This document shows, piece after piece, positions 33,301 to 55,002 of a stretch of 64,000 nucleotides of DNA. Position 1 is the first letter of the stretch. Each line of letters starts with the position of its first letter. The notes beneath the pieces were generated by a model. That model worked only from the letters and a program-made list of their open reading frames with translations. It made no database searches and was not told the origin of the DNA. This DNA is from Perna viridis. Its lineage: Eukaryota. Position numbers and translations under genes: made by a program. The DNA lies in NCBI GenBank assembly GCA_037379345.1, contig CM074511.1:42166862-42230861 (forward strand). Direction: 5' to 3'.

Positions 33301-33875
33301 AGGCTATCTACAATTTCTTTTAAAGTGTAATGTGTCCCATCTGGCAGTGGAACAAATCGACCTGTTACATCCTTACTTATGATAATACTGCCACCTTCAT
33401 ACTTAGCGACTAACCCTTGAGTGGGCAGATACTTTAAAAGTTTTAAACGTTTCCCCACTTTGACTTGTATTGTTTTATCACGGCTCGATTTTGCAACAAA
33501 TTCAGATTCAACTCGTACGTACCGAGGAAAATCTCTAAGAAGTTCTGGCACCGAGCAATATGGTCTTGAATTTGGTCTAATAATCAACACTTTACCTTGA
33601 TATCCAAGTGGTATTATTATTTCGTTTGGTTGCGTGTATCCGGTCCAATCTTCATGAACAGAGGTGTTCAATGAAGAAATTACTATCGCATTGACTTTCT
33701 GAACACTTTTCACACATTCCAACACGAGAAAATCACCTGCTGAAATAGATTCGGATTCGGTGTTACCTAAGTATCCTTCAGACAACTGAACTTTAACAGG
33801 TAAAGGTCCCTTAGCAACTTCACTCAAGGTCTTGGTTTCTCTTGACCCATCAGTATTTCGGTCCTTAAAAGCCAT
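27372..33875 (-). CDS. GAREM/Themis-family CABIT-SAM adaptor, paralogue B (~592-633 aa)
   Basis: Exons 33875-32816 (CABIT: LPVKVQL, IIIPLGYQGKV, SVPELLRDFPRYV, YTLKEIVDSLPLPQCV; ends PPKIPPRPPR), optional 31860-31738, 28443-28351 (KPPQCPPR...HEYEPIE), 27997-27372 (SAM, ends EGWRPRIE). All junctions are phase 1 and in frame. Confidence 0.88.
28655..28862 (-). mobile_element. Degraded Penelope-like 3' tail
   Basis: atccagggacaaagatcagaca...ggagcatggtccagatgc...gggtaagcgtc matches the tail at 13030-13195. Confidence 0.7.
30315..30575 (+). mobile_element. Solo Penelope-like 3' tail with 38-bp terminal tandem duplication
   Basis: gcttaccctgccggtgcacctggtccatgctcccag...gagttgctcatt; tttgatttccgctagaatcttggttcccttgatt repeated twice. 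Confidence 0.8.
31738..31860 (-). CDS. Candidate 123-nt symmetric internal exon of paralogue B
   Basis: Strong acceptor (ttgttttcgtttgtag), open frame KTTNMVLNEKEDPIDVYTENF...TTKI, phase 1-1, weak donor gtatac. Confidence 0.45.
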
Positions 33876-36800
33876 TTTCCTCGCGTTATTTAAAATAATG
33901 TTTTCATACACGAGTAAAGCTATGTTTCAGGAAGTATTTCAGACACTTCAGGAACATACTAGTCGAAGTAACATCCTTTAAAAATAGATTTGCATTTTAC
34001 ATTATATAAATAATTCATCTGAAAGAAAAAAAAGTTGACATGGCGAAAAGTGTAATGTGCAGTACAAGATAATAAAAATTCACTATCGTTCTAGAGAATT
34101 CAAAATTTTGATATGAATTTAGTGTCAGGTTCTTTTTAGTGATGGGCCATGGAAAGCACTTCCAAACAACTATTTGATGAACTTAAGTCAGATGAGGATC
34201 ACCTGTATTAAGTGCCACGTGGTCCCCCCCACTACGTAGGGATGACATTCTAATCGACAGGGCTTATATCATCAACACATAGTTCAATGCCTAGCCCATT
34301 ATATCAGGTCTATTCTACATTTGCACTGATACATTTTGATTAATATAAATGACTGTCTTCACCTTGAATTTTCTTGTTTTTGACACTTTTTGTTTTTCTA
34401 TTATTGCCATCTGTCTCAGCAAATGACAATATAATGATGCATTCTTCTTCCGCTTTAGCGCTCATTTAAGGAAAATGCAAAGTCCAAAGTTATTTGTAAT
34501 GTGAATTTTACAGACTAAAAACTAGTTTTTATCTTTAAATACGTCTGACGGTTGATAGTTTGTGGCCAAGCTTTTACTTAAATAAAAAAAAATGTTCAAG
34601 TATGATTTGTATGAAACCAACCCTATAAAATGCCATAAGGATCTATAATGCATGAACGCAGCTCATCGAGATGCTTGCTAATTCACCCAAAATGAGCAAT
34701 AGTTTGTCAAGAAAAAAGTTGAATATAGTAAAAATATCATCCTCTTAGTATTTGTTGCTTGGCTTAGAATTATTTTTTCTCAGCCTATATGCAGAAGTCC
34801 TTCTTTTTACTATAGATGAAAATAGACATTTGTTATGTCACAATATGGAGAAAGGTATTTTTATCCCAGTTTCCATTTGCATTTGTTTGGAATTTTTCTG
34901 AATCTTGCACATATTATTTAAAGATAGAAAAGTAATATAACCTTACGACAGACATGCGCCTGTCCACAGTCCGATGTTGGCCATTAATGGGTCTTTCTAT
35001 CGTAAGTTCATTTGGAAGAAGTGTCATCCTTTAGTTAGCGAGGATGTTGCGCTGTAAATTAAACGTAAATTTTGTTGTGATAATAGAAGATAGTATTGTG
35101 TCGTCATGACTTATGATCTATTTTACGCGTAGGATTTTTTTGTGAAATTGACTGCTGGATCACATGTTTGTCCTCATTTTAGCCTACACTTCGTTGAATT
35201 ATTTTCATATATCACGGTTTTTATACCATAAGGCACTAGAAAGTGTGGTTTATGAACGGTCTAATTCAATTAGCACTTCAATTGAAGAGCTAAAATGAAT
35301 CTCTTATATAAAAACTTTAAAAAAAAAGAAAAAAAAGAAAATAAGAAACGTCTGGCATTTTCGATTGGCACCGATTTATTACATATACATGATTCTATTT
35401 TAATTTGTAAAAAGATCTTTTTATGAGATGTTTCTGCAATTATTGATATTTAAAAAAAATAAATCACGGTAATTCCATTTTGTCATTTTTTCCATATGTT
35501 GACCATTTATGTCGCATTGTTTTACCCAGAGCGGTAGTGAGGGCTTAAATTATGACATAGATGGCCAGCCAGCCCTTGGTAAAACCATGATAAAATGGAG
35601 ATGGCGTGATTTATTTCGATTCTTATGTGATTAGTTTCTTCATATTTTTTAATAGACGCAGTCTATGTATTGCACGAAATGTTGATCATGTGTTTATCAC
35701 TTTTTTACCATGGCTGTCGTCTAAAAAGCTTTGAAGAACGTCGTAGTAGAATGTATGATTGAACAATTATTTTTTTACTGCAATCGTCATTCCGAAGTAG
35801 TAATTTAATATTAACATTTGTCAAGTTACAAGGGCCAAGTCCGTATGATGTGAACGTCCTATAGTCTGTCCTTTCGTGCGTGCTTCCATCCGTCGGTAAC
35901 AAAGCGAGTGCGGGCTGTAACTTTGTTGTCTTTTGGTAAAGGCATTTCCTATTTGGCATGTGGGTAGATCAGCGCAAAACGATATGTCACGTACCGGGGT
36001 TGGTGGTCTTTGACGTTGATCTATGACCTCAGTTTCAAATTGATTTAGTCGCGCGGGAAAAAACATTGTAATAAATTGTAAAGTCCATTGTCAACTTTGC
36101 TTTGTCAGTGACGTTGGCATGGGTGGAAATAGCTCTTATTAGATCGAATACAATAACATCAATCAGTCTATGTCGTTAATAATCTACAAAACTGTTTTAT
36201 GTCTCGGTTGTAATGGGTTTTGCGTAATAGATGAAATGTGATTTTGAAAAGCCGATGCACTGGACTTATACTACAGCGAAGCCCACAGAAATTGTATCCA
36301 TCGTGAATCAATATAAATATGGTAACAATGCTCCAAAAAAGTCTGTTCTATTTTTATGCACCCTATAATATGTACATTTCTTTGGAATCAGTAAATTTTA
36401 CATTTTTTTAAAGTTGCACTATTATTTCATATTATATTAAATAATTATAAAATTATTTTCAAAATGTCTGCAAATAAAAAAAAAAAGTTTTTTAGTTTTT
36501 GTTCCGTGTCCTCTGGGTTATGATATTATTTGTACCCGTGTTCGATATGTAAACGGAAATCAAATCACGATCATAGTAAAAATAGAAATACCGACGAAAA
36601 TTGTGAAACTTAAGTTGATGTCACATATTTGGCAGGTTTTAGGGATCTACAGTAATGTGCTTTTTGTTTAAATATAAAAAAAACGAAGTTCTGAGGCTTC
36701 TTGTTGCGCAACTAGCAAAGTTTTGAAGTATTCACAAGGATTGAACATAGACTCAACGTATACCTTAATGACCCGAATGTTATGTAACAAGTCTTTGTAT

Positions 36801-37920
36801 AAGATGAGGTATCACGTGGGCGTATTCAACTTAGATATTTTTTTTATGCTTTGTCATGTTTGTTTAAAATTTGTTAGTTTGAAACAATACACACATTGTT
36901 ACCATGCTCCGATCGAATGAATCGATACTGTTTGTTTTTTAAAGCACTATATAAAGTACATATGCTATATATCTTTGCAGGCTGTGTTGTTATTTCATCG
37001 AATGATATCTATTTTATACAATTTATAGGGCTCAACCATTTTCATATCCAATAAATTTATCTTCATGCGAACACACATTCCTTACAATGTTTGTTTGTTT
37101 GTTTTTTTTTCACAAATGCATTTTTAATGAGATAGACCTAGGGTAAGCGACACAAAAAATTAACCGCTCCATTAAGTATTAATGTTTTGCAATGAAAAAC
37201 ATATTTTCCATTACGTTGAATTGTTTTAATGCTGATATTTTAATGTTAATTTTCTTTAGATATGTATATTCAGAAATGATACCGTTTGATAGCCCGTCCC
37301 AGACTACTTTGAATTGATGGAAAGTGTGCAGTAACTCAAATAGGCTTGTTAAAAGTATATATATTATTGTACAAGTTCATAGAAGAACATACATCATAAC
37401 ATAATAAACTCCACTACACTTAACAACCACACATCACAAATAAACGAAAAATTAAAACATATAAATGGAATAAAAATTTAATTGAAAGCTGATATTTCGT
37501 ATGACTCTTTTTACTTGATGGTATGAGTTTTTTTTTTTCGTTCAAACAAGCAACTATTCATGGAGAAAAAAATTCAAAATTTTACCATTTCGTACATTTT
37601 ATAATTTTTACTTCTAATAGCGAAGTGATATTTTCATTAGGGGTCATGTCCTTAAACAGACCAATATGCCATTTGTAAGTACTAACATCGAGAAACTAAT
37701 AATCATGATATATGTTTAGCAACAGTTCTTCGGGGAATTAATTCAGAGTCCTCATTTCTTATCTGCATTTATCGAAGTTTGGAAAGTCGATAACATACGT
37801 ATTTGTGTTCTAAACCACGTAACCTGTGTGTAAGTTTTACAATTTAAAAAATAAATAGATTTCCATTCGGATTATACCTTACTACGGAAGCCGGTTAGGG
37901 TCATTTGAAAAAAAAATAAA

Positions 37921-38447
37921 TATGTCGAAATTACGACATACTATGTCGAAATAACGACATAGCTAAGTCGAAATCACGACATAGCTAAGCCGAAATTACA
38001 ACATAATATTTTGATATTACGAATTAATCGCGCGCAGGACTGTCGCGGGATTTCCGGAAAACGAAGCGATGGCGACCGGTGGAAAGAAGAAAGGTATGTA
38101 AATGATATTTCGATATTTTTACACGTTATTATGCCATTGCAGAATATTCATGTATGTATTATAATGACTATAGCATATCTCTAGATGATACTACTTATAT
38201 CTTTATGTTATAAAATGTAGACTAGCTCTTAACCATACAGAGCATTTTTTATCCCCCAGTCGTTCTCCGAAAAACTACATTTCATGAAATTAGTCTGTCG
38301 CATGCGTTTATTTTCAACAAATTACATAACACATTGCTTTAAATGAGTTTTATTTGGAAGAAGCGTTTAGTTATTGATAAAACCGTGCATAGTTGTGGAG
38401 ATATAATGTATTTGTGTAAGTATGGAACTTTCATATACTCTTAAACC
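37921..38447. repeat. Left inverted arm of the IS3EU element (inverted copy of ~53221-53810)
   Basis: Continuous near-identical reverse complement, e.g. ggcgaccggtggaaagaagaaaggtatgtaaatg versus catttacatacctttcttctttccaccggtcgcc. Confidence 0.93.
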
Positions 38448-38482
38448 TATGGAAGCCGATTAAGGCCACTTAAAAAATATAT

Positions 38483-38775
38483 CATGTCGCAATTACGACA
38501 TCCTATGTCGGTATTACGATATAGGTATGTCGAAATTATGATATAGGTATGTCGAAATTACGATATAGTTATGTCGAAATAACGATTTAACCATGTATGC
38601 CGAAATTACGATATAGTTATGTTGAAATTAGACTTACATTGTCGAAATTACGACAAAGTATGTCGAAATTACGATATAGTTATGTTGAAAGTAGACTTAC
38701 ATTGTCGAAATTACGACATCGTATGTCGAAATTGCAATACAGCTATGTCAAATTTACGATATGACCGTGTCGTAA
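38483..38775. repeat. Subterminal ~21-bp tandem repeat (tatgtcgaaattacgatatag) after an internal TATGGAAGCC terminus
   Basis: About a dozen degenerate units; the same unit occurs at 37921-38005 and inverted at 53660-53810. Confidence 0.9.
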
Positions 38776-39253
38776 ATTCAACAGAAAGTTACAGCAATGA
38801 TGTCATACCCGCTTTGACTTCCGCCACCTCGATAATAGCCGACGGTAAGTCCCAATATTTGATATTAAAAGTTTTATTGCAAAGCGATAAACTTAGAGAA
38901 CGTTTAATAAGAAGCATGATTATTCACCAAGAGAAGAGCAAGACTGATGCTACATATTTAATCGCAAAATACCAACTCACAACTAAACAAATGGCACATT
39001 GGTGGGATGATTCTAAAAATGACTTTTATACATACACATTATTAGAAAAAAATATCAAGATGTGGTTAGGATAATTGCGTGGGATATAGAAAAAATCAAT
39101 AAGTAGTATCCAACTATGTAACCACAGAAGTATAAAATCATTTCGTTGAATTTCAGAAATGTAATGTACAGAAGTAGAGTTTTTTTATTCTGCAATTGTG
39201 CGATGAACATTTTGTAATTCTGATTTATTGTCGCTTTTTATTTCTTTGTATAG

Positions 39254-40882
39254 CTATGGACAGGAAACAGATATGCAAGTTTTATTTTAGATTGGTTTTG
39301 AATATAAAACCATTTTAAGATTGCTTTTAGAAGTTCATGAAATCTTTGTTAGTATGAGAACACTAAAAAGAATTCTAAAGAGGGCAACTTTAAATCGTAG
39401 AAAATCAAACACTGATGTTTTGCAAGCAGCACTTTTCATCCAGGATAAAATTCAATCATTAGGAGGACACCAAGGTTATCGATGGATGCATCTTCAACGT
39501 ATTCAGAGTGGCATTGACATATCTAGAGATACCGTGCAATTGATGATGCAGATAATTGATCCTACTGAAATTGAAGCTTGGCTAAGAAGACGGCAATATT
39601 TTGCGAGGGGACCCGACTTTCTCTGGCATCTCGATTCTTACGACAAAATAAAAAGATATGGACTGTGCATTAACGGCTGTATCGATGGGTTCTCCAGGCA
39701 GGTTACACGCTTATACAACCAGCAGCAAACCACGAGTAGTTGCAGGCTACTATATGAAAGCAGTTGATTCCAGAAAAGGGTGCCCAAACCATGTGCGAGG
39801 CGACCGAGGCACAGAAAACAGACATGTAGCTGAAATGCAAAATTTTTTGAGAGAGGAAAAATCATTCATTTATGGCAAAAGTACGGCAAATCAAAGAATA
39901 GAAATGTTCTGGAATATTTTGAGAAGACAATGTTGCTAGATTTGGATTGATAAATTAGGAGCCTTAGCAGATGAGGGTCTTTTTGACTTTGGAATTCTAG
40001 ACAGAAATATATTACAATTTTGCTGATAGTCCTCTCTTCAGATGAGCTAACTTTCAAACTTCCTTTTTAGTTTGGCAACAGGTAACTAGCAAAGCATATG
40101 AGTAACGAATATTTCTTGTTTTGTACAAAATTAATATGTTTATTTCGTCGTATTTTGCAAGCGAAATGTTCATGATTAAACAGGAAAATGGACACTTATT
40201 TTCGCCGCCAAAGCAAATACGTAAAAGTTAATGTTCAGAATAGGATTAGAATAAGTATAGGTCTAGGGGTTGGGATTAATATAAGAGTAGGTAAGAGTTA
40301 GGGTTAATGGTCAAAGTGCAAGCTTCTTTCGGTATTTGATAAGGAACTAAATGATAATAGATTCAATGTGACTCGTCCAATAATAGTATGTGATACCATT
40401 TGCAAGGTTGAATAGGGTTTTTTGTTACTTTTGCCTTTTATTTGTCTTTAACTTAGCCATTTAATATTGACAGTTCGAAGTAAAGTTAGAACATCATTTT
40501 GGACAGTAGATGTACATTCATATGTGTATTTAATAGATGTTAATTTAACATTACAGGCAGATTTGGACAATACATGACCACATGGAACACACATCGTATT
40601 CGCCCTACCAAAAACCAATATTGTCCTCACGGACGTCCAATGGTCATGTACATGCTTCCTGCCTCCTGTTCGACTCGATGGTATCTATTTGAAGTTGAAC
40701 AAGTTAAAATAGATGTCTGTAAAACCGAATGCATTTTTCGCAAATAGAGATTTTGTGATGAAGTTATCTTAGAGCTCTGCCTTATTTACATGAAAGAGAA
40801 CAACTGGACTTTGCCAGCAACAATCGACGAAGCCTTACTTCTGTACTCAAACCTTAGGAATTGCTTTCTACATGACTTGTAA
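39254..40882 (+). pseudogene. DDE integrase-core transposase (IS3EU type), frameshifted
   Basis: Motifs SMRTLKRILK, GYRWMH, RRRQYFARGPDFLWHLDSYDKIK..G.CINGCIDGFSR, RGDRGTEN, GKSTANQRIEMFW; second exon from 40557 with WNTHRIRP...PHGRP..MY.LP and stop at 40880-40882. Several frameshifts and stops. Confidence 0.88.
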
Positions 40883-41229
40883 TCAATGCAATTATAAGAT
40901 TATTTGATGATCTGGTATATATGCCGTTTTGTTCTCATCTTAGGTCAAATTGCTTCCTTTTATTCTCGATGCATAGTGCAACGAAAATAGGATGCCAAAA
41001 GTTAGCTTCTGTCCGTCTGTCCGTCATTCACACTTTCTTCGTAACACATGGTTTTAGAGACCTTGTTCAAATTAATTTTGCGCGATTGTTAGTAGTACTA
41101 GATTTGTTCGCAGCTTCTATTTAATTGTGGGGGTTATAACAGGACTTTACTCTTCGTTACAAAATCATTTAATCTGATTTCCTTGGCATTTTAAATTTTA
41201 TGAAAAGCAAAAGATGTCAAATAAAGCTA

Positions 41230-42240
41230 GATTTGTTGAATTTATACGACCGGAGAAAAAACGATCGGTCCTATTATGCAATGAGGATGTCGTCGTCGTC
41301 GTCGTAGTTGGTTTTTTCCATGCGATGACTTTATATGTAGTGAACTAAATGAAATTTTGATATATTGTTTATTGCTTCTAGCGGCAGCTGTCTATTTTAT
41401 GGGTCACTGGCCTCTACCGTTCTACATTTGCAAAAAGGGGGACAAAAGGGGTAAATTAGGTCTTTATTTAAAATGATGTAGAAGGTTTAATTTGTATTCA
41501 ATTTTAACGATTCTTTTTTTAATTCGTTTCTTATAAAATTCTGTGTTGTGAGTTTTGACAAATTTAAAATACCGTTTGACATTTTAGTCTACAGGAGGCC
41601 TGAATGGGGCCACACCCTAAAAATCACTTTCTTCATTTTCGGTCATTTTTAGGGAATTCTGCACAAAATGGCCGTTTGGATTTTGATCCGTTAAAATCAT
41701 GTCCCCGTTACTAAAAATAAACATATGGGTCAGAGAGTAGTTGTTTTGCATGTATCTCAAAAACCGTTAAGTTCAATCAACCTCTGACGGAGTGAAAGTG
41801 TTCAACATGAGATCTAGCTGCGGTCTGATTGTAGTGAAAATATGTTGACCCATGTTGGAATTGTCTTTTTTGGACGTTTTTCTTTGCTGTTTTTTTATGT
41901 TATTACTTTCAAAAATCTTCTCCTCAGAAACAACTTCCAAGACTTCAATGAAAGTATGTTTGATTGTTTCCTAGGGTATCTTGCACAAAATGACAGTTTG
42001 GATTTTTGATTTGTGAAAATACATGGCCCCTGTTACTTAAAATAGCACATAGGGGTCAAAATACATATTTTTTTGCAAATAACCCAAAAACAGTTGAATT
42101 ATGCAAAATTCTGATGGAGGGTAATATTGTTCACCTTCAGAACACGGGCCAAACATGGCCGTCGTAACTAAGAACTGAACATAGGGGTCAAAATCCTTTT
42201 TTTGACATTTTTTCTTCGTGCAACTGTAGAAGAATAATAA
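41230..42240. mobile_element. Helentron-associated (HINE-like) repeat nested in the IS3EU element
   Basis: (gtc)n microsatellite, aaaatcttctcctcagaaac, repeated catggcc...ttactaa...cataggggtcaaa subunits. Confidence 0.45.
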
Positions 42241-42295
42241 AGATGAAAGCTACTGAAAAGATAAACATTATATTCTGAGTTAACTGGCAGTATTG

Positions 42296-44100
42296 AAAGA
42301 GTAATCAAAAGAACCAAGGTTATAGCGGTAATCAACAGAATGTAATCCAGAGACAAATACCAGACATGGAAAACAGATACACACAACAAAGAACACAAAG
42401 TAACTAAAATCATACATACAAAGTAACAAAAGCAAATGAGCAACTCGCAGGTGCTGTAGGGATGTTGCCACAGATGAAAGGAAAGTTGACAATTCTGAAT
42501 GAAAAGTCATCAGGTATGTTGTAAAGTTTGGTCAACAGTTTTCCTTTACCATCGACTTCCAAGTGTAGGTCAAGATATGAGGCTGACCTCACAGTGTCTG
42601 TAGTATCCTTTATCTCAAGTTCTATGGGGTAGATGCGATGTATCAAATCCCCGAAATTAGGATTGTTTAAAGATAATACGTCATCTATATATCGGAAACT
42701 GAGATTAAAGGATTTAGCTAAACGATATTCTTTCTTTCGGATCGGATCAGCCATAAAGTCAGTCACATAAGAGTAAAGAAATAGGTCAGCAAGTAGAGAA
42801 GCATAATTTGTTCCCATTGGAATGCCGACCGTTGGTTGAAAAACACGTCCACAACACTGGACAAATATGTTGTCGATTAAAAATTACAGCATTTTGTGAA
42901 TATCTTCCTCTGCATATTTGGAAGATGATTTGGAATTATTTTTCACAAAGTATGAGGAATCTCAACCAAGAACCATATATTTGTATCGAGGTGTACCATT
43001 TTTTTTTGGAAAAACATCGATGTATAATGTTTTAAGTCGGGATTTTAACTTGGTATGGGAAATAGAAGTATACAGTGTTGAAAAATCATAGGTTTTAAAG
43101 CTATTATATTCCGATAATAGTCTTGAACTGATTGTCTCTAAAAGATCTTTCGATTTTTTTTCAGGATCCACATTGAATTGATAGCACTACGGGAGTAACA
43201 AGTGTTTTTGTAGGACTGCAGACCCTCTTTGACAGCTGCAGAGTATAGAAGTTAAAAGTTTTGAAAGAGGTTTGGCGGTACATTTTGCAGATCCAGATAT
43301 GTAACCTTGTTTGTATGGATTTTTGTGGAGTTAAGGAATCCAGTACATAGACGGTAAATCACAATCATCGACCTTGGTAGATGACCAAAAGAGGACAGCA
43401 GATTTATGGTTTTCCACAATTTCTTCTTTGGAGAGTGTGGTAGCAGTATAGGTATTATCACTGCTATTATTGTCTACGTCTTCCTCTCCTCTGATAATAA
43501 ACATTGAATGTAAAACGTTTTGCAGACATAAACAATGCTGTTTTGGGCTTTATCTGCTGGTACGACAACATATTTGTCATGTATAGTAGACAACGTTTTT
43601 GCTACATTGGGGTCTCTAAAAACTGATGTAGCATTGACACTCATTGGCCTACTTAAAACTTTCATTCGTTTCAAAATTAAAGATTTAGACCTCACGGCCT
43701 TTAATCACTCTGACAGAGTTCTAATCAATATCTTCACGTTCTCGTTTTATCCATTTTCTTGTGTAGTCCTCCACGGCATCCATAAAAACTTTAAAGTTAT
43801 AATTCCAATTTATGGAGCGTGGTTCACGGTACTTGGGACCTTTAGAAAGGATATTACGCAGAGATTCGTTTTCGATGATGGCTATATCTCCCGGAACGAC
43901 GTGACCCAAAGGACCATATTTCAATGAAGAGTTTTTGCAAGAATAGTCAGGTGTTTTACCCTTGAAGTCCTCAATCTCGAGGTTCAGCAATAGCCTTTTA
44001 TAATTGAAATCACTTCAAAAAGGCGTCAAAAATGCGGTGGTGTCAAAGTACTCTGGCGAGAACACAACCCTCTCACTGTAAAATCTAATCACTGGAAAAA
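42296..44100 (-). mobile_element. Second Penelope-like copy of the same family, nested in the IS3EU element, internally deleted
   Basis: GHVV.GD, LSKGPKYREP, VVVPADKAQN, TYDFSTLYT, GTN.A.LLADLFL, FRYIDD. The RT is joined directly to the 3' tail at ~42447. Confidence 0.9.
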
Positions 44101-44339
44101 TCTTACACTAATAAACGAACTTAAATCAGTTAAAAAACGCCAGAATCCCTTGTTAAAACAGTTTCAACTGTTTATACGTGATACAAGAAAAGGACTACTA
44201 GCAATTAAATGACATGCCAGCTCCAGACCAGTTTAAACCCCCCCCCCCCCCAAAAAAAAAAAAACCCTCACCGTACGTAATATCAATCCCAATTCTTCCA
44301 ATGCGGGTGTTGAATCACGGTACATCTTCAATCCATACA

Positions 44340-44497
44340 TAGGAGCTCATTTACTGATGTTACTTTGTATGTATTATTTTTGTCACATCATGTTCTTTGT
44401 TGTGTTTCTCTGTTTTCCATTCCTGGTCTTTGTCTTTGGATTACATTCTTTTGATTTCCGCTAGAATCTTGGTTGCCTTGCAATTGATTACTCTTTT
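44340..44497 (+). mobile_element. Penelope-like 3' tail fragment inverted to the copy at 42296-44100
   Basis: gctcatttac...tgttctttgttgtgt...ggattacattcttttgatttccgctagaatcttggtt. Confidence 0.7.
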
Positions 44498-46316
44498 TTG
44501 AAATTTAAAACTCTGTTAGAAATACGAGCAAATCTAACCAATTGTGATATGTAAACACCATATAATATATAACAGGATGGTTAGAAGTGGACGTCACCAT
44601 CTTAAAACGGTAGTTGACAAAAGATGGTACAGAAAATAAACAGTAAACACAGAAGTATGCCTTGCCTGTTACACATGTTCAGTGGGCTATGACTGTGGTC
44701 ATATACATATAAAAACCATAAATGTATAACAACATAATCATAATGCACCCTTATTATCATTGTCCTAGAAGGACTAACAGATAATGTAAATTCGGACAGA
44801 CAGACAGACAGACAGAAGGACTGACGAACAAAACTGGCATACCCCGAACTGCAGTTTAGGGGTATAAAAACTGTTTTCTACACCTTTAGGCCTCATTGGA
44901 ATGGGAAATGCCTTTAAATGCACTTTTAAACTCAAAACTATTTTCAATTGCTGGGGTCGCCCATGACTCATTGGGTAAAGTGAGGTAAATGTAAGTGCAA
45001 AGTTGTTACATGTCAGACAAATATAAAGAAAAGGTGAATGCATTATACAACCAAAATTGTTTTGAGTACAATAAAAATAACATTTAAATGCAACAATGTC
45101 TTTATTGATAATCGGGTGTTCTTGGCAGATAAAATTAAACAAGATGTCGAACCCTACATCATGCTAAGAATACCCCCCCAATTCACAGTTTCAGTCAAAG
45201 CCGGGAAATGAACACAGTACAAATTATCATGAGAAAGCAATATATCATATATTTAAGTATTCCCTGCAATAGCAGTTGATTAGTCAGTTTCAAAAATTTA
45301 CTTTATGCAGATATAAAAAACTACAAAATAGATTGGTAAAATGGAGGTAGATTAGCAACAAACCTGAAAAAAAGGGAGACATGGTACAAGTCAACATGAG
45401 AAAGTAATATACCAAATAACTAAGCATTCTCTCCTGTAGAAGCTGAGAAATCTGTTAGAAAAAAGTGTAACGAACGGACAGACTGACAGACAGACTGACA
45501 AGGTTATTGCAGTATATATTAAAAACAAAATCATGAAGCATGTTCCATATCTATTAGCTGGAATGTCACATCTTGGTCTACAGATACATACATGTATGTA
45601 CCTCATTTGCCATTTAGATTCAGCTACTGGACTCAATATAAAATTTATACATGTTAACAAGATTAATATTAAACAATGTCTTTATTGCAAATCAAATGAA
45701 CAACCTGATGTATAATTATGTATTGACGGAAGTCTTATCTGGTCTGCCGATACTTCATTGCTATTTAGCTTCAGCTTTAAGAGTCAATATAAAATTCATA
45801 CATGTTTACAAGTACAAAACTGACATTATTGCAACAATGTCTTCATTGCAAATCAAATGTATTTTTTATCCATACATGAAGTAAAATAAAACAACAAATA
45901 AATAAAAGTGAAATTAGAGTTCATACTAAAGAAATCAAACATTCAACAAGATCACAAGGTCTTTTCAAACATCTCATTTGCTATTTAGCTTAAACCCGAA
46001 GTAGTGTAGGTTTATTTAAATCTATGAAAATCATCAATTCTGATGTTAAAGAAGAATAATTCTTATATGGAGATCATATTTGTAGATAATGTTGAGCTGA
46101 GTTTAATTTTGTCATGTAAAGTTTTCTCAACCACTTGGATTTTAGTGATAAAGGAAACACTGTAAAAAATTATCAATTACGATATTAAAATGGAAATATA
46201 CTCATGATACTAGTTAGCTTAGAAAAGACTTGTATAAAAATACAGCAATATCTTCATTGCTAATAACATGTATTCTCACTTAACAACATGATGATGAACA
46301 CTAAGTGATGATATGT

Positions 46317-49300
46317 TTACACAATGTCCATCACCCAAAAGTTCTCGCTTAGGATGTTGTCAAATTCTGAACGGAAATTCATAAAGTTTTCATATATTTT
46401 GGATAACTTTAGTATACATCCACATGTGTGAGCAATTGGCCTCCTTTGTAGACCCTGCATAACTGCAAATTCCACTTTAATACACCTACTTATTAATAGA
46501 TCTGATCCAGCACAAAACCTTATGAATATTTTCAATGTTCCATCATCTAAGTTCTTCACATATTTCTTCAGGTTATTAGATACTTCTGATGACTGTACAT
46601 CCATTGGATCTGGAAACTGAAGGATCTGCACTACATTTTTATTGGTTGGTTCTAACTGTCCATAAATATCACTTAGATCAATTGATTTTAATCTTATGTT
46701 GTTATTAGCAAAAACATCCTTCCAACAATCTATCACAAACCTTGGTGATTGTAATATCTGTTTGTGGGATATTTCTTTAAAAAAAAACTTTAAAAATGTC
46801 ATTTTTTGGAATTTTCTTGCACTCATGACTGTCCAATGCCTCAATCAAATCATCCATGTCTATTTCTGAAAAGTTTGAACATGCTTTAACAAAAATTTCT
46901 TTGTCTGGTACAGATACAAAATTATAAAAGTCATTCATAAGCTCTTCCATCTGAAAAGTTTCATGACCCAAAAGACATTGTGAAAGAAATGTTTTTGATA
47001 TCTGAATAGGCCAGTATCCAGTTTTTCCGAACCCATATACCAATATACGTGCAACTGATTTCCATTCTTCTTCACCAAAGTCGTGGCGTAATGTTGGAAC
47101 TTTAACTGTTCTCCCAAGAGTACAGTTCTCGTAAAACAACTGCCAAAACTCACTTAATAAGTCTCTTAATACACCACCTGAATCTTCTGCCTTTTCAGTT
47201 TCTCCATTTGGCAGAACCCTTGTAATTGATAGAGGATTGTAACATATTGCTGGATCTTTGAAATATCCAATCATCTCTATCAAGGACATTGATCCACGAT
47301 GAATTTGAATACTAGGAAAAGGGGTTGCTGCTTCATATGGCAAAGTACTGTCATTGTCATTTACAAATCCTTCATTTTCAAGGGCACCATCCAAATTAAA
47401 AACTATCTCAGGACCTACTTCTATGACAGATTCTCTATTTTCTATTTCAGAATCAAAAATATATTCCGGTAAAGTTGGTGGAACATTAATTTCATAGAGT
47501 ATACAATTTGCAGTTTCACTTGTTCCACTGCATGAAATATTAGGATCTGGTAAAGAGTCATCATCTGATAAATCTACTCTCTTTGATTGACCTTTATACA
47601 CTGATTTCTCTTTGTTAAAACCTTTCGGCAGTTTTGATGTTGTGGCCAAATAAAATCTCAGAATATTAACACCAGTTTTTCATACCATTCTTCAATGGTG
47701 TCATCACCTTCTATTACATCCTCTGAAAAGTCACAAAGTTGGAATTCAAACTGGTCAGAAGATCCTAGTTTGCTTTTCCCTTCAGGGAAAAAATGGCTTT
47801 AGCTTTTTCAACTATTTCTTTCTTTTTAAAGCATTTGGGAAGGTCAAACTTTCTTGTGCTGCCACCATTTTTCTTTTTTACTTGCTTGAAAGTTGAAAGT
47901 TTCTGTTTCCAAAGAGATGGGACCTTTTAATAGGCTCTTCTTCCTCTTCTGAATCACTCTTGTTTTTCTGTATGTTGAGTTTCCATCTCAAAGCTTTTAT
48001 TAAAGAAGATTTCTTTTCTTGTGCTGACCCCTTCAGCCCTCTCTTACAGAATTCTTTCAAAAGAAATCTGTCTCCAGCTAAAGGAATAAACTCCTTCAAA
48101 GAACCATCAGGAATAGTTTGAAGTATACGCTGATCAATCTACAAGAAAACAACATTTATTTTTATCATTTTCAGCTAATAAATTCATAACATGAACTTGA
48201 CAGCATCAAATTCACGATAAGTATATGTTAGCCCGGGATTTTGTGTATAAAAAAGAAATAGATCAGTTCAAAGCAACAGCCAATCTACTTGCTCATTACT
48301 GACATAGTACAGAAAGAATTATATCATGGGCCTACTAACAAACGATAACCCCTGCATGCCTCATGCAACAAACGGTTGTTGCTTTGTTCAAATTGAACAT
48401 TATTTTCCAAGGAGGAGTTGTGCTTATGAGGCCATTCTTTAATTTTGAATATCTAAAATGTCAGAGTTGAATTATCTCCCCTAAATGATATCAGAGAATA
48501 ATTATTGTCCTTCATGCACATCAGCATATGATGTCCTTCCTTTGTATTAAGTTTCATCAAATTTCATGCAGTGGTTAAAGAGGAGTTGCGCTTACAAGAA
48601 ATGTGGACAGACAGACAGATAGACAGGGCAATATCTATATATCCCCCCATAAAGACTGAAAAGTCGAACTACATGTACATCTCCCTTCAATGACCTTCGA
48701 GCTCAATTATTTTTCTTCATGCACATCTCCATATGGTGTCCTTCGTTTGTGTATAGTTTAATAAAATCTGTGCAGTGATTTTAGAGAAGTTGTGCTAACA
48801 AGAAATGTGGAGAGACAGATGGACATATAGGGTGATGTATATATACCCCATAAGTTTGCTGGGGTACAAAGAGACATACCGTGACTGTTCACTGTGGAAT
48901 TGGGAACAAAAGATTGAGTGGATACTAATAAAGTGTCATTTTCTGCATTCAGAATGGAAGACCATTTATGTTTTTTAGCATTATGCAAAAGAAAGTTTGA
49001 ATGTATCTTTTGAAATGTGAGTGTTTCAAAATTAGTTGTGATTACCACTGCCTCAGGAAAAAGGGTTGTCAGAAGGGCATTTTACCTCTGGGATCAACTT
49101 GTCCTTAACATACTAGACTAGACATATTGTGAGCCCGTAAGTGATATGTGAGAATAATTATTTAAAGTTTCATCAAAATCCATGAAGGGGTTTTCAGAAG
49201 GAACTGCCATTATGGCAATCTTTTCAATGGACAGACAGGGTGATTCCTATATACCCCCAAAATTTGTTTGCTGGGAGTAAAACTATTCATGGGAAACCAT

Positions 49301-52300
49301 ATATTCATCTATTTCTAGCACATTGCCCCTGCCAATAATGTTTATAACAATTTGAAGCTTCATAAAATTTAAGAAAACAAGGGTAAAAACCATGAATATA
49401 TGCATTATTTTAATTCTGAAGTGGATGTAATTTTTTGGTAGATAAACCATGCTTTTCATATAGCTTATGATATGATAGTGGGAGCAAGTAATTACTGGTG
49501 GTGGGCATAGTGGGAGAAAAGTGCAGAATTTTGAGAAGAGGGGCAGGAGAGGGAGAAAAGGAGTAGAGGGAGAAGGGTGAAAGGGCCCAACTGTTCACCC
49601 CCTCATTACTATGGTACTTCATTTGCAGTTACCAACTTATTATCATTCAAGACTTTAATTTGGCCATCAGTATAGCCTCTTGACTTTAAGAAGGAAATAA
49701 TTTCTTTCTCCATATCCATATCTGGACTCCCTGTTAATGTAAAGAAACAAATAAATTTTTGTACTCAATAATATAAAAAACAAGAGGCTCACAAAAGCCT
49801 GAATTGCTTATGGCAAACAATGCCCTATAAACTAAGCAACGAAGCAAGGCTTAAGCCATTTACAAAATTTTCATAATCCTCATTTAACTTAGAATACCAT
49901 GTTGCCGGTGTAAACCAAATATTGTTGAAATCCAAACAAGCGTAAAAATTTGCCTGAAAAATTGCAATTTTTTTTTATTAAAATGGTCATCCAGAACATA
50001 TTTGTTGTCATCACCATTCAATTCCTGATACAATGTTTCCTCTGAAAACCAAAGATTGTTAAAATTAGCAAATGTAAATATCGGGGAGGAGGAGGGGGGT
50101 GGCTAATGTTACCACAATACAACTTAGAGTATCATATTTTACCTTTACAATAGCTTTTCGGTCATTATTCTGCATTTTCTGAACGCGATGTTTATATTTG
50201 GACTCACCCATTCTTATTCGAGAAGCAACTTTTCCCATAGCAAAAAAAAAAATATTCATTTCATAGAATTTAGCAATCATAATGTCTTTATATGATGTCT
50301 AAAAAATCCAAAGAATAAAATTTTATTAATTTGTGCCATTTCTATTTTTTTTTAAGAAAGAAACTCATTTATTTTGCGAAAATAAGTAATAGGGTTCTCT
50401 CTTGTGATTTTGAACTTAATGATATTCTAGACAAAAAAAAAATAAAGACAGTTATGATTCTTTATCAAAAACATTTGGGTGGAGTGGAGCATTTTATGAA
50501 TAAAGCGGCTTTCAATTTGTGATGTGGCGATGCTTATAGACCTGCATTCTAAATATCATAGACCTATCATACTATCATATACGTTGTTCATGTTCAACTG
50601 ATGTAAGCACATAAACATTAAATTTTAAAAGTCGATTGATCGTGACTGTGGGGGATTTATGCATTATGCGGCTTTGAATTTGTGATCAAGTGATGCTAAT
50701 GCAACTATATACCAAGTATCATTGACCTAGCATAAGGGGTTCATGTTTAAATGAACTTATATCAGGCACTTGATTCTACGATTTTTTTTCCACAAGCGGT
50801 GGCGGATCCAGAGGGGGGGCCAATGTTTGGCCCTGTTTAGGTTACAGACCACCAATTCAACCAATGAGCATTTGGAACGTACGCAAAAATAGTCCTACGC
50901 AGAAATTACTCCTGTTCCTCATAGTGCTGTGAAAAAAGTTCTCATCTCATCTGAAAAATTTAAACAGTTTCTGAAAGGAAAAACATTTCTGTACATTTTA
51001 TAGGTGCATTTTGCTTCTTGTGATGTGAAGCCTAATCTCCATAATGATTTCTAAATATACCGCTATCTTGTGAAAACACTGGGATTTCCCATGCTATTTA
51101 TAGATACTTCACTTCCGGTGACCAGTACTGCACTGCAAGTCTGCTAACCCCACATGCCATTCTGAGGATTGTGAGCTGACATATGTAGAATCATGCTGAT
51201 ATATAGTCCTCTGCAGGTTAAAGTTAAGGTAAATTCCAGAGAAGCCATTGAATATTGTGAAATTAGCATAGAAGCCTATCGGAAGTGGAATTAGTGGTTT
51301 CTAGCTTGTTTAGTGGGCCCTTCCTATGAAAATTTCTGGATCCGTCACTGATTAGTACTTATATATAAAGTAATATAAGTACTAATGGGAAAAAACGCCA
51401 GGATGTGAAATAAAGAGAAAACCTACGACAAAAATACATTTCATTTTGTTGGTCTTGTCGATATGTACCATATTTACAAGGGGTTAATAGTGACAAGGAA
51501 AAGAAACGCCCAATAAAATTGAATGTGGTTCACTATCCCCAAGTTGTGGACATTTAGCCGTGTTTTACGTCCCAAAGTTTCAATTCAATAATTACCCCAC
51601 AAATCATTAAGTAAATATGACCTATTTTAATGAAATAAAGCTTGTTAAACTCTTAACTGTTTCGTACATAAGATGTTCTAATTTGGAATCATAACTTAAC
51701 TCTTTTGTAGTTTTCGAACTATTCCGGTTTAAATCATTTATTCAGTAAATCTTACAAGGCCTCCTCTCAAAATGGGATACATGATATGGTCACCCCCTTC
51801 CAATATTTTATAAAAATAGAAGTTGTGTCTATGAAGCACGTGGAGCCAAGCATGCCTCCGATCGTTTTAACCAAGTCGCTCAAGCAGAAAATGTAGGTCA
51901 AGGTGACCTAATTCATAATAATCCTGTTGTACTACGAGTAACCGAGATTTATCTACTGATCAAGTATGGAGGCCAGAATATATATTTCCAAATTTCCCGG
52001 GCCATAATGATTTTTTTTTATTAAAAAGGTACGCCGAGTGTAGCATGATACCACAGATAATATTGGGGGACCTTTATGAACAGTAATTTGCCTTGGACAC
52101 ATGAAGAGAATTGTGGATTGTCTACGCATCTTTGTCACATGTAGTACATACTGCATTCTTTAAAAAAAAACATTGCATGATTTTTTTCCCAAATCAGACA
52201 AAGAATCAAAAATTAAACTTTTGGTCATACATGTTGCCCAACTCTGGCCTCTATAAGTTGGCATTACAACGGTTTAAGATACATCAAATCCGTTGCCATA

Positions 52301-53598
52301 TTACTAAAAGCCGTGGATTAAAGCTACATTTAGAGAAGAAATCATTAAATTCCAATGAAAAATTAAAATTCGGCCCCTTTGACCCGTAATTACTCGGAAA
52401 TCATAAGAGCTATCAAAAATCTAATTAAAAACCAAGGCAGAGATTTTATTGAGGAACATAATGTTTTTTTTCAAATTCAAACCAGAAATAAAAAAAAAAT
52501 ATGTATATTACATTCCTCAGACTTACATGGTTATTCTGTTATTATTCCGAGACCTATATTGACCAATCAGTAAAGATGAAGCATAAAATCAATCTTTATA
52601 TTCAATCTTTGTTTATGCAAACACGAACCGAAATTGGCAAACCGTGCTCTTCTAGTTCACAATATTTTCTAAGTATTGCAGATTTATGCAACCAATGCTG
52701 AAAATTCTGTCAAACGAGGATTTTTACTTAGTAACAATGTCGTCAATGGTAAATGCGAAGGAAAACGCACGACAAGCGCAATAATACCTCTGTATAGTAA
52801 AGCCTAAAATATGTATCATCTAACATAACATAACTTAACAAAACCTATCAGAACGTATCAACTTCGTACTCAAATGCATTCACACCTTTCGACTACTGTT
52901 TTATTAGGCATTAATACGCTTTTAGTACGCATTGATACATTGGCGATACCCTTTTCTAAGTTTTAGTGCGTTTAAATTTTCGTACCGTTTGTTTTGTGCA
53001 GACCAATACAAACCGGACTGGTCACGTATCAATCTACGTGTAGCTACGTATGTAGCCGTTTTAAGTACGCGTTGATTCCATTTGATATATATATTACCGT
53101 TTCACTATGTTTATATGAAAACGTAGTTAAACGGGATAGCCAAAACGTGACAGTGTGAGCTTTAATCTAGTACAGGTCTTTAAATCACACACCTATTGTC
53201 GGTGACATTGATTTTTGAGGGTTTTTAGGGTATATGAAAGGTCCATACTTACCCAAATACATTATATCTCCACATCTATGCAGTTTTTATCAACAACTAA
53301 ACGCCTCTTCCATATAAAACTCATTTAAAGCAATGAGTTATGTAATTTGTTGGAAATAAACGCATGCGACAGACTAATTTCATGAAATGTAGTTTTTCGG
53401 AGAACAACTGGGGGATAAAAAATGCTCTGTATGGTTACGAACTAGTCTATATTTTATAACATAAAGATATAAGTAGTATCATCTAGAGATATGCTATAGT
53501 CATTATGATACATACATGAATATTCTGCACTGGCATAATAACGCGTAAAAATATCGAAATATCATTTACATACCTTTCTTCTTTCCACCGGTCGCCAT
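46317..53598 (-). pseudogene. Transposon-borne SAM-like/ubiquitin-like/HECT E3 ligase (G2E3-like HECT), frameshifted
   Basis: Exon 1 53598-53574 (MATGGKKK), exon 2 49730-49633 (EIISFLKSRGYTDGQIKVL), exon 3 48138-46317 (IDQRILQTIPDGSLKEFIPLAGDR; GG.TRK...FFPEGKS...LRFYLAT; HECT: E.AEDSGGVLRDLLSEFW, FIRFCAGSD, RRPIAHTCGCILKL). Broken across several frames. Confidence 0.85.
48340..49280. mobile_element. Helentron-associated (HINE-like) repeats in an intron of the E3 gene
   Basis: Repeated ggagttgcgcttacaagaaatgtggacagacagac...ctatatacccccc...tttgctgggg units with (gaca)n. Confidence 0.5.
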
Positions 53599-55002
53599 TG
53601 CTTAGTTTTCCGGAAATCTCGCGACAGTCCTGCGCGTGATTAATTCGTAATATCAAAATATTATGTAATAATTTCGACTTAGCTATGTCGTAATTTCGAC
53701 TTAACTATATCGTAATTTCGACATAGTATGTCATAATTTCGACTTAGCTATATCGTAATTTCGACTTAGCTATGTCGTTATTTCGACATATTATGTCGTA
53801 ATTTCGACACATTCCGTACCTTACGGCCTTTTAACTGATAGTAGATCTGTTGATGTACTAACGAATCCAAACAGAAGTATGTGTGTATTACGTAAATATA
53901 TGTCTTCTTGTTATTCATAATTATGGTATTTGCTTAAACTACTTCCTGATTGGACTATTCAAACAGATATCTCAAGTGTAATCGTAGTGAAGTAAAACCT
54001 TTAATGACATACAAGTTGTCAAGATTTTTAAAAATCTAAACACGGTGCATGTTGAATTTGTTAGCTGATTAATCATTTACTTAAAAAATCTCAGTGAGAA
54101 TTGAAACACCAAGCTTCAGACACTGTGATTAAAGGTGCAGTACGAGTTCGAGTCCCGCGGAGGAAACGACAAAATATTTGTTGCAAATATAACAGTTCTA
54201 ACATGCTTACATTTTCTTCCCTGTATCAATTTGACCCGATGGAGCAGTGTAGTGAATAGAGTCGTCACAGTCTGAGACATTTTTTTCGTATATTGTGACT
54301 ATCAATAAATGTGTATCAGCATTTTTCATTTTTTAAAAATAAGCTGGCTTGTTTGATCTATAAATGTTTATTTTTTTTGCCTTGTGATATTGACACATCA
54401 TGTTTATATAAAAATAGCAATAATGAATACTTTAAATATTTATTAACATAACAAATAAAAAAAACGTAATATTTATAAAGAAAACAGTAAATAATCTATT
54501 GGTTACAGTAAAATATGCGACAGTGATCTATGACAATAAATGCAGAATAAAGTCGACACTATCGACACTACGTAAGAATTCTAAAAAAAAACGTGTGTAA
54601 CCCTCAATACCTATTGTGGTAATGACTTGTTTGATAGAATGACATCTACAAAGGCAAATGAATGCCTAAAGTACTTGATAATACTACAATAAAACCACTG
54701 TAAAACAATCACAAAAAAAAACCTAATGTAATTTTAAGAAAATATTTCGAACAATAACTATGCCAAACCAGAATCAAATGCAATGCTTATTGAAGAAATA
54801 GATTTGTGCATACTAAATTCGATAGAGACAAACAGTGCTATATATATTGGTCAATTTGGATAAGTAGCAGTATTAAAAAATCAACTTTGTGTGTAAAAAG
54901 AAAACTATATCTTAAATATATTATATCATAATCACATTTAACAATCAACAGAAAACAAAATTGAATTAAAACAAAAGCCATGATAATTCAGCATTTATCC
55001 TT

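What the first reader, a model, noticed from the sequence alone, without database searches (positions are those of the whole stretch)
37883..53818. DNA transposon carrying its own SAM-like/Ubl-like/HECT ubiquitin ligase
Seen: the TSD-bounded unit contains exactly two convergent genes, a DDE transposase and a three-exon gene whose first exon lies in the terminal arm. That gene encodes a SAM-like N-terminus (FLKSRG..Q...IDQRILQTIPDGSLKEFIPLAGDR), a putative Ubl segment and a HECT domain retaining the catalytic AHTC Cys. Inference: the ligase is an integral transposon gene, possibly degrading host silencing factors or regulating the transposase. Many annotated G2E3-like genes may be such cargo. 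IS3EU is known to encode a second protein; I know of no functional characterisation of it.
Basis: partly seen in the sequence, partly recalled or inferred. Interest (0 to 1): 0.8.

Follow-up and report, generated by a model that had tools for sequence, protein, structure and literature searches.

The report
IS3EU transposon with own HECT ligase
This is a decayed 15.9-kb copy of an IS3EU-type DNA transposon whose family, in molluscs, fishes, a frog, an acorn worm and a beetle, carries a SAM-like/ubiquitin-like/HECT ubiquitin-ligase gene next to its transposase; no paper I could search describes such a ligase gene in a transposon.

Summary
Window 37883-53818 is bounded by a perfect 6-bp duplication (CCTTAC), TACGG...CCGTA termini and ~560-bp inverted arms. 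It holds two convergent genes: an rva_4/IS3EU DDE transposase (+) and a HECT-type gene (-).

RNA contigs from three studies splice a first exon inside the right terminal arm to the body of the HECT gene.

Both genes are pseudogenes in this copy, and the other ~6 genomic copies are broken as well. Differences between copies are spread evenly over codon positions, which indicates neutral decay.

The core inference, that the ligase is an integral element gene, is strongly supported. The same convergent HECT/transposase pair occurs in three more diverged families of this genome and in grouper, Xenopus (two chromosomes), Ptychodera, a weevil, eastern oyster and an unnamed ENA contig. In three of these species, TIRs and perfect 6-bp TSDs enclose both genes.

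AlphaFold and Foldseek confirm a bilobal HECT fold and a ubiquitin-like domain. The catalytic Cys is invariant in 54 homologues. The SAM fold is only a lead.

Function is untested, whether counter-silencing or transposase control. I saw no homologue named G2E3-like.

The element is a new member of a known superfamily. What is new is the identity of its second gene.

The parts
37877..37882 (.). left target-site duplication CCTTAC
37883..38447 (+). outer left terminal arm. It is an inverted copy of the right end, starts TACGGAAGCC, has 22-bp repeats at 37924-38005, and carries a copy of the mini-exon (ATG 38069, last base 38093, donor GT 38094-38095).
38449..38790 (+). second, inner terminus-like sequence (TATGGAAGCCGATTAAGG; TACGG in other copies) followed by a 22-bp repeat array at 38484-38762. 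It is probably the ancestral left end.
39256..40040 (+). transposase exon A (rva_4/IS3EU DDE core; WHLD, DRGTEN and NQRIE motifs kept). It is a pseudogene, with frameshifts near 39296 and 39703 and a stop near 39937.
40550..40678 (+). transposase C-terminal exon B; the position of the intron before it is conserved in other species
42168..44474 (-). nested RT-like remnant (YIDD-type motif; no Pfam hit) flanked by 130-nt inverted repeats at 42312-42441 and 44345-44474. All family copies share it, so it was already present in their common source.
45077..46316 (-). 3' untranslated part of the HECT transcript. Its approximate end is inferred from the length of a 3267-nt RNA contig.
   Evidence: table 8
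46317..48138 (-). HECT gene exon 3: second half of the SAM-like domain, the Ubl, a disordered linker and the HECT domain. The Cys codon is 46424-46422 and the stop is 46319-46317. Frame changes near 47897, 47795, 47678 and 46785 break it.
49633..49730 (-). HECT gene exon 2 (98 nt; internal ATG 49719; first half of the SAM-like domain). Its donor reads GTAACT here and GTAAGT in four other copies.
50841..51306 (.). insertion specific to this copy, of a very high-copy repeat transcribed on both strands, inside intron 1
53574..53778 (-). HECT gene exon 1 inside the right terminal arm (ATG 53598-53596; splice donor after 53574). The 5' limit is approximate and taken from contig length.
53223..53818 (-). 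right terminal arm, with 22-bp repeats at 53662-53808 and terminus ...TTCCGTA. About 30 nt next to the terminus are missing compared with other copies.
53819..53824 (.). right target-site duplication CCTTAC

Best explanation
Shown: this is an old, dead copy of a ~15-kb IS3EU/GingerRoot-superfamily cut-and-paste DNA transposon. Its family plan is long terminal arms with 22-bp subterminal repeats and two convergent genes, an rva_4 DDE transposase and a ~650-aa protein. That protein is built of a SAM-like helical domain, a ubiquitin-like beta-grasp domain, a disordered linker and a bilobal HECT domain with an invariant catalytic cysteine 34 residues from the C-terminus. The HECT gene is transcribed from within the terminal arm, where its first exon lies, and is spliced with GT-AG introns. 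This broken copy is still transcribed, mostly skipping exon 2, whose donor carries a +5 G-to-C change. The gene pair is conserved inside TIR/TSD-bounded elements across animal phyla, so the ligase-like gene is a core element gene and not a chance passenger. Inferred: the protein is a working HECT E3 that forms a ubiquitin thioester on the conserved Cys. Its SAM-like and Ubl modules would bring it to partners or chromatin. During transposition it would modify host proteins (silencing, chromatin or repair factors) or the transposase complex to the element's benefit. I favour host-factor targeting (about 0.4) over transposase control (about 0.25).
For: Termini, TSD and arms. Transposase family. 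HECT fold on a 44%-identical intact homologue: AlphaFold pLDDT 80.8; Foldseek hits HUWE1, UBR5, E6AP and NEDD4 at E about 1e-11 over 370-400 columns. Cys invariant in 54 sequences; 53 of 54 pass Pfam HECT. Ubl fold: Foldseek E 2e-4; VIA Z 9.0, rmsd 2.3 over 80 residues, with all top 50 hits ubiquitin-like. RNA: joints 53574>48138 in three runs and 53574>49730 in one; the strand of the raw reads fits a minus-strand RNA. Donor change at exon 2. Co-occurrence within the genome. Co-occurrence in other species. TIRs and perfect 6-bp TSDs around both genes in grouper (AGTAAA), eastern oyster (TGATCC) and weevil (GGTTCC). Published IS3EU traits (TA..TA termini, 6-bp TSD, TAYGG ends, two proteins): PMC10045372, PMC12730594, PMC10853768.
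Against: No activity data exist. Pfam and the PDB sequence profile detect only the C-lobe. No intact copy was found in this genome. Variation among copies is flat over codon positions, so there is no sign of selection within the family. The test of congruence between HECT and transposase distances was inconclusive. One Mytilus edulis locus has no transposase within 10 kb. Many more transposase matches than HECT matches were found in this genome (132 against 21), so most of them had no HECT match near them.
Confidence: 0.8

Rival explanations
1. The HECT-like protein is an integral element gene but is not a ligase. It would act as a scaffold or a ubiquitin/E2-binding adaptor, for example tethering the transposition complex to chromatin through its SAM-like and Ubl modules.
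For: Sequence profiles detect only the C-lobe. The domain is somewhat short, about 330 aa. From my own knowledge, the HECT domain of G2E3 was reported not to act as a classical E3.
Against: The Cys and the surrounding motif are invariant in 54 sequences from several phyla. The predicted fold has both lobes. A fish G2E3-like HECT protein is an active K48 ligase (PMC13623101), though its relation to this family was not tested.
Confidence: 0.18
2. The ligase mainly acts on the element's own transposase or its post-cleavage complex (turnover, disassembly, dosage control), not on host defence factors.
For: The two genes are strictly linked and convergent in every element examined.
Against: There is no direct evidence. 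The complex prediction gave no verdict, which counts neither way.
Confidence: 0.25
3. The HECT gene is a captured host gene, a dispensable passenger of some lineages only, like gene fragments in Pack-type elements.
For: Far more transposase-like matches than HECT matches in this genome. Fungal IS3EU elements carry other second genes, such as alpha-kinase and TET/JBP (PMC12730594).
Against: Gene order, orientation and full-length ORFs are the same in molluscs, fishes, frog, acorn worm and beetle at only 30-48% protein identity. Each such pair examined lies inside TIRs, and three have TSDs. Two identical intact copies lie on two Xenopus chromosomes.
Confidence: 0.1
4. The unit is not a transposon but a duplicated host locus that happens to have inverted repeats.
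For: None beyond the low copy number (about 7).
Against: Copies on six chromosomes, with flanks that differ at every end examined. The flanks in this window are unique. A 6-bp TSD here and in three other species.
Confidence: 0.02

Closest known systems
[quoted passage not shown]
   Same: DDE transposase of the rva_4/IS3-like type, 6-bp TSD, TA..TA (TAYGG..CCRTA) termini, TIRs, and two encoded proteins. The taxa where IS3EU was first reported (zebrafish, beetle, acorn worm; PMC11934779) overlap those where I find the HECT pair.
   Different: No paper I could search names the second protein of animal IS3EU as a HECT-type ligase or describes a first exon in the terminal arm. Repbase itself could not be consulted.
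Fungal IS3EU elements with alpha-kinase and TET/JBP genes (PMC12730594) and the Styx element (PMC10853768)
   Same: Same superfamily. They also have a second gene in the orientation opposite to the transposase. Accessory enzymes are proposed to help the element escape silencing.
   Different: The accessory genes differ (alpha-kinase, TET/JBP dioxygenase, GATA/CCHC/DUF3577). There is no HECT gene.
Cellular HECT E3 ligases (HUWE1, UBR5, E6AP, NEDD4 family)
   Same: Predicted bilobal HECT fold, with the catalytic Cys about 35 residues from the C-terminus.
   Different: 12-17% identity. The N-lobe is invisible to sequence profiles. The N-terminal modules (SAM-like plus Ubl) are not those of any HECT subfamily I know. 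The gene is carried by a mobile element.
G2E3 and fish NHRE3 (PMC13623101)
   Same: Divergent HECT domains at the C-terminus; NHRE3 is an active K48 ligase.
   Different: G2E3 has PHD/RING fingers and NHRE3 has an NHR domain, and both are multi-exon host genes. This family has SAM-like and Ubl modules. A specific relationship was not tested.
Polycomb PRC1 modules: RAWUL/ULD of RING1B and PCGF, and SAM of PHC/SCM
   Same: The best structural matches of the Ubl domain are RAWUL/ULD domains. A SAM-like domain sits beside it.
   Different: This is fold-level resemblance only, 7-20% identity. Other Ubl folds score within one Z unit.

Membership tests
IS3EU/GingerRoot DNA transposons | DDE transposase of the IS3/IS481-like integrase type | tested here: met
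   Pfam rva_4 on window ORFs. 236 homologues all carry PF24764. D, D and E motif columns are invariant or nearly so.
IS3EU/GingerRoot DNA transposons | 6-bp target-site duplication | tested here: met
   CCTTAC on both sides. Related elements: AGTAAA, TGATCC, GGTTCC. The C8 copy is imperfect, ATTTAG against ATTAG.
IS3EU/GingerRoot DNA transposons | TA..TA termini (TAYGG..CCRTA) with TIRs | tested here: met
   TACGG...CCGTA; arms 94% complementary.
IS3EU/GingerRoot DNA transposons | transposase groups with Repbase IS3EU entries in a tree | not testable with these tools
HECT E3 ligases | bilobal HECT fold | tested here: met
   Tested on homologue P0004, 44% identical to the family's C2 copy. pLDDT above 90 over residues 344-670. 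Foldseek E about 1e-11 to HECT domains over 370-400 columns.
HECT E3 ligases | catalytic Cys about 35 residues from the C-terminus | tested here: met
   Invariant C640 of 674 in 54 sequences. Present in the window at 46424-46422.
HECT E3 ligases | Pfam PF00632 above the gathering score | tested here: inconclusive
   The window ORF scores 18.8 bits, below 23.9. The C4 copy scores 25.5 and 53 of 54 homologues pass, always on the C-lobe part only.
HECT E3 ligases | E2 binding and ubiquitin thioester formation | not testable with these tools
   This needs biochemistry.
G2E3 orthologues | N-terminal PHD/RING-like fingers | tested here: not met
   No PHD or RING family in 54 members. The N-terminus is SAM-like plus Ubl.
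Ubiquitin-like (beta-grasp) domains | beta-grasp fold | tested here: met
   Model residues 110-216 have pLDDT about 97. VIA Z 9.0 to polycomb ULD, and all top 50 hits are Ubl folds.
SAM domains | five-helix SAM fold or a profile match | tested here: inconclusive
   Five helices are predicted. The PDB profile hit to the ANKS4B SAM has E 0.74. There is no Pfam SAM hit. Atlas leads point to SAM families at 0.77-0.81 and TM 0.54-0.62.

The most novel reading that the evidence does not exclude
A lineage of IS3EU transposons found across animal phyla encodes a catalytically active SAM-Ubl-HECT ubiquitin ligase that the element needs in order to move. The ligase is expressed from a promoter and first exon built into the terminal inverted repeat. 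It would be the first transposon-borne HECT E3, possibly marking host silencing or chromatin factors for destruction. The same mini-exon in the other arm may also head the transposase mRNA.
Probability: 0.35. Interest if true: 0.8.

Novelty: new member of a known kind. Interest (0 to 1): 0.58.

Why it matters
Accessory enzymes of DNA transposons (proteases, kinases, TET dioxygenases) show how mobile DNA manipulates its host. A conserved HECT ligase would add the ubiquitin system to that list. It would also give a concrete, testable candidate for counter-silencing in animals.

There is a practical point too. Hundreds of 'uncharacterized protein LOC...' and 'HECT domain-containing protein' models in fish, frog, mollusc and beetle annotations, and at least one in a bacterial MAG, are transposon genes and should be masked or relabelled.

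Naturally intact copies exist, for example two identical loci in Xenopus tropicalis. Assays therefore need no reconstructed sequence.

Tried and rejected
- **Paralogous empty site.** Both flanks are unique in the genome apart from a 70-bp high-copy repeat 320 bp to the right, so no empty site could be found. Reads could not span both ends because of the 6-kb limit.
- **Tree and distance congruence of HECT and transposase.** Nine pairs are almost equidistant. The Mantel test gave r -0.11, p 0.66, or r 0.39, p 0.07 without the degraded C10 pair. This is inconclusive.
- **Selection within the family.** Variable sites are flat over codon positions, which fits neutral decay.
- **Complex prediction of HECT protein with transposase** (P0025 with P0144, from one contig). 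The tool gave no verdict, which is not evidence either way.
- **SAM fold.** A single-sequence search of the PDB gave only spurious hits. The Atlas search on the Ubl region was uninformative.
- **Does the transposase mRNA use the arm's mini-exon?** The only near-identical database contig (L051) is colinear with the genome, so this gave no answer.
- **G2E3 naming.** I found no such name among the homologues of the family or of the stand-alone HECT ORF on C5.
- **RT-like block.** It has no Pfam hit.
- Searches were made exon by exon or ORF piece by ORF piece, by reference, and that joined step is left out. I built no consensus of the element.
Full report
**What is there**

The window comes from a 723-Mb, AT-rich animal genome. 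The closest named relatives of the proteins are from mussels.

- **Boundaries.** The element runs from 37883 to 53818. It starts TACGGAA and ends TTCCGTA. It is flanked by CCTTAC at 37877-37882 and 53819-53824.
- **Arms.** The two terminal arms are 94% complementary over 467 nt plus a further 60 nt. They carry arrays of a 22-bp subterminal repeat.
- **Superfamily traits.** A 6-bp TSD, TA..TA termini of the TAYGG type and an IS3-like DDE transposase are the published traits of the IS3EU/GingerRoot superfamily (PMC10045372, PMC12730594).

**The two genes in this copy**

*Transposase, plus strand.*
- It starts at the ATG at 39256. Homologues start the same way.
- It matches Pfam rva_4 and has a conserved C-terminal exon at 40550-40678.
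- Two or more frameshifts and a stop break it.

*HECT gene, minus strand.*
- Exon 1 lies in the right arm, with ATG at 53598-53596 and its last base at 53574.
- Exon 2 is 49730-49633. Exon 3 runs from 48138 to the stop at 46317.
- The splice sites are GT-AG and the frame runs through the three exons.
- Exon 3 is split into five frame pieces and lacks about 19 residues of the Ubl domain.

**RNA evidence**

- Twenty runs from eight studies hold the HECT exon. Most are probably RNA, judging from the small size of their contig sets.
- Contigs from three runs of three studies join 53574 directly to 48138, with 0-2 mismatches to this copy. One contig joins 53574 to 49730.
- A 3267-nt contig runs from about 45077 to 48138 and then from 53574 to about 53778. 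The transcript therefore starts within the last ~250 bases of the element and has a ~1.2-kb 3' untranslated part.
- Raw stranded reads lie in the direction expected for a minus-strand RNA.
- The exon-2-skipping form puts a stop right after the mini-exon.
- This copy alone has GTAACT instead of GTAAGT at the exon 2 donor. That is a plausible cause of the skipping, but this is an inference.
- The exon 2-to-exon 3 joint was not seen in RNA. It rests on splice signals and on the continuity of a Mytilus coruscus homologue.

**Family and age**

- About seven copies on six chromosomes share the whole 15-kb layout at 90-95% identity.
- The shared layout includes an RT-like remnant between the genes at about 42.2-44.5 kb, flanked by 130-nt inverted repeats. 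It was therefore already present in the source element.
- Every copy has stops or frameshifts in both genes.
- Variable sites are equally frequent at the three codon positions and about as frequent as in non-coding parts. This fits one burst of transposition followed by neutral decay.
- Only the window copy and the C8 copy keep both ends. C8 has an imperfect TSD.

**Is the ligase gene integral?**

Within this genome:
- Every family copy that retains both regions has the HECT C-terminus and the transposase 6-7 kb apart and convergent.
- Three much more diverged pairs (31-45% identity) show the same arrangement: C10:25.73 Mb, C3:9.15 Mb and C3:7.37-7.39 Mb.

Outside this genome:
- The HECT piece finds 170 proteins of about 600-730 aa. 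They come from mussels, oysters, many teleosts, gar, Xenopus, Ptychodera and beetles. Most are called 'uncharacterized protein'.
- I fetched seven loci from six named species and one unnamed ENA contig. The transposase lies convergent, 2-7 kb downstream, in seven of these eight loci: grouper, Xenopus tropicalis (two chromosomes, identical protein), Ptychodera flava, a weevil, Crassostrea virginica and the ENA contig.
- One Mytilus edulis locus has no transposase within 10 kb.
- In four of these species, long inverted arms enclose both genes.
- In grouper, oyster and weevil the ends are TACGA/TACGG with perfect 6-bp duplications AGTAAA, TGATCC and GGTTCC.
- A distance-congruence test was inconclusive because the sampled lineages are nearly equidistant.

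I conclude that the pair is the standard gene set of a widespread animal IS3EU lineage.

**What the protein is**

All structure work was done on an intact homologue, P0004, 44% identical to the family's C2 copy. It was folded with an alignment of 54 sequences. AlphaFold gave four parts:

| Residues | Prediction | Confidence |
|---|---|---|
| 1-70 | helical domain | high |
| 110-216 | beta-rich domain | high |
| 221-334 | disordered linker | low |
| 344-670 | HECT-like domain | high |

- **HECT domain.** Foldseek matches the last part to HECT domains (HUWE1, UBR5, E6AP, NEDD4) at E about 1e-11 over 370-400 columns, which covers both lobes. Sequence methods see only the C-lobe. The cysteine of AHTC is invariant and lies 34 residues from the C-terminus.
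- **Ubl domain.** The N-terminal part was folded alone. Residues 110-216 are a ubiquitin-like beta-grasp. The best matches are polycomb RAWUL/ULD domains (Z 9.0, rmsd 2.3 over 80 residues), and all top 50 hits are Ubl folds.
- **SAM-like domain.** This reading of residues 1-70 rests on five predicted helices, a weak PDB profile hit (E 0.74) and Atlas leads. I call it inconclusive.
- **Not a G2E3 orthologue.** There are no PHD fingers.

**How it probably works**

Shown: the architecture, the transcription from the arm, the conservation, and the fold.

Inferred: the protein is an active HECT E3 that the element carries for its own benefit. I favour action on host factors (silencing, chromatin or repair proteins). 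This is by analogy with fungal transposons that carry TET/JBP dioxygenases (PMC12730594). Control of the transposase itself is the main alternative, and a non-catalytic adaptor role cannot be excluded. A complex prediction for the ligase and transposase of one element gave no verdict.

**Novelty**

- IS3EU elements are known, and they are said to encode two proteins (PMC10853768).
- IS3EU families were first reported from zebrafish, beetle and acorn worm (PMC11934779), the kinds of animals where I see this pair. The deposited families probably already contain this gene.
- In 8.4 million searchable papers I found none linking IS3EU, or any DNA transposon, with a HECT gene. One recent paper says the structure and function of IS3EU remain largely unexplored (PMC11934779).
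- I therefore file the element as a new member of a known kind. The annotation of its second gene and the exon in the arm are the new points.

**Limits**

- Repbase and Dfam were not available.

Noticed in passing
window 38449-38790: There is a second, inner terminus-like sequence just inside the outer left arm. It reads TACGGAAGCCGATTAAGG in copies C4 and C2, and TATGG in the window and in C8. It has its own 22-bp repeat array. The outer 565 bp looks like an inverted duplicate of the right end added to an older left end. This feature is shared by the family.
   Followed up: partly
window 38069-38095 and 39253-39258: The left arm carries the same mini-exon and GT donor as the right arm. Splicing it to the acceptor just before the transposase ATG (tatag|CT ATG) would keep the frame, so both genes might share an arm-borne first exon. 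An alternative donor, GTAAGT near 38846, also exists. No RNA evidence was obtained.
   Followed up: partly
window 49628: The exon 2 donor is GTAACT in this copy and GTAAGT in C4, C2, C9a and C9b. Transcripts matching this copy skip exon 2.
   Followed up: yes
window 50841-51306: This copy-specific insert belongs to a very abundant repeat. It has RNA depth in the hundreds to tens of thousands on both strands, and 97% identical copies elsewhere, for example on C10.
   Followed up: no
window 42168-44474: An RT-like remnant (YIDD-type motif, no Pfam hit) with 130-nt inverted repeats lies between the two genes in all copies. Its arms also occur alone on C10 and C3.
   Followed up: partly
L011 (G000:C5:40497979-40501329), ORF 1486-2577 minus strand: This is a stand-alone 363-aa ORF that is a complete HECT domain, 28% identical to the transposon family (hhalign E 4.5e-42). 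It has a similar second copy on C5 and multi-member clusters in mussel data. No transposase match lies nearby. It may be a host gene family or another mobile family.
   Followed up: partly
G000:C9:26.60-26.62 Mb (L031-L033): Two copies of the family lie head to head, with their transposase sides adjacent. Both are truncated there.
   Followed up: no
protein P0013: A member of this animal transposon family is deposited as a protein of a 'Candidatus Thiodiazotropha' MAG. This is probably host (bivalve) DNA binned with the symbiont.
   Followed up: no
window 20780-21778 and 32808-33911, minus strand: Two CABIT-domain ORFs (Pfam E 5.5e-12 and 9e-15) lie upstream of the element.
   Followed up: partly
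window 54137-54204: A ~70-bp unit present at 60 or more places in the genome at about 90% identity, often in local clusters.
   Followed up: no
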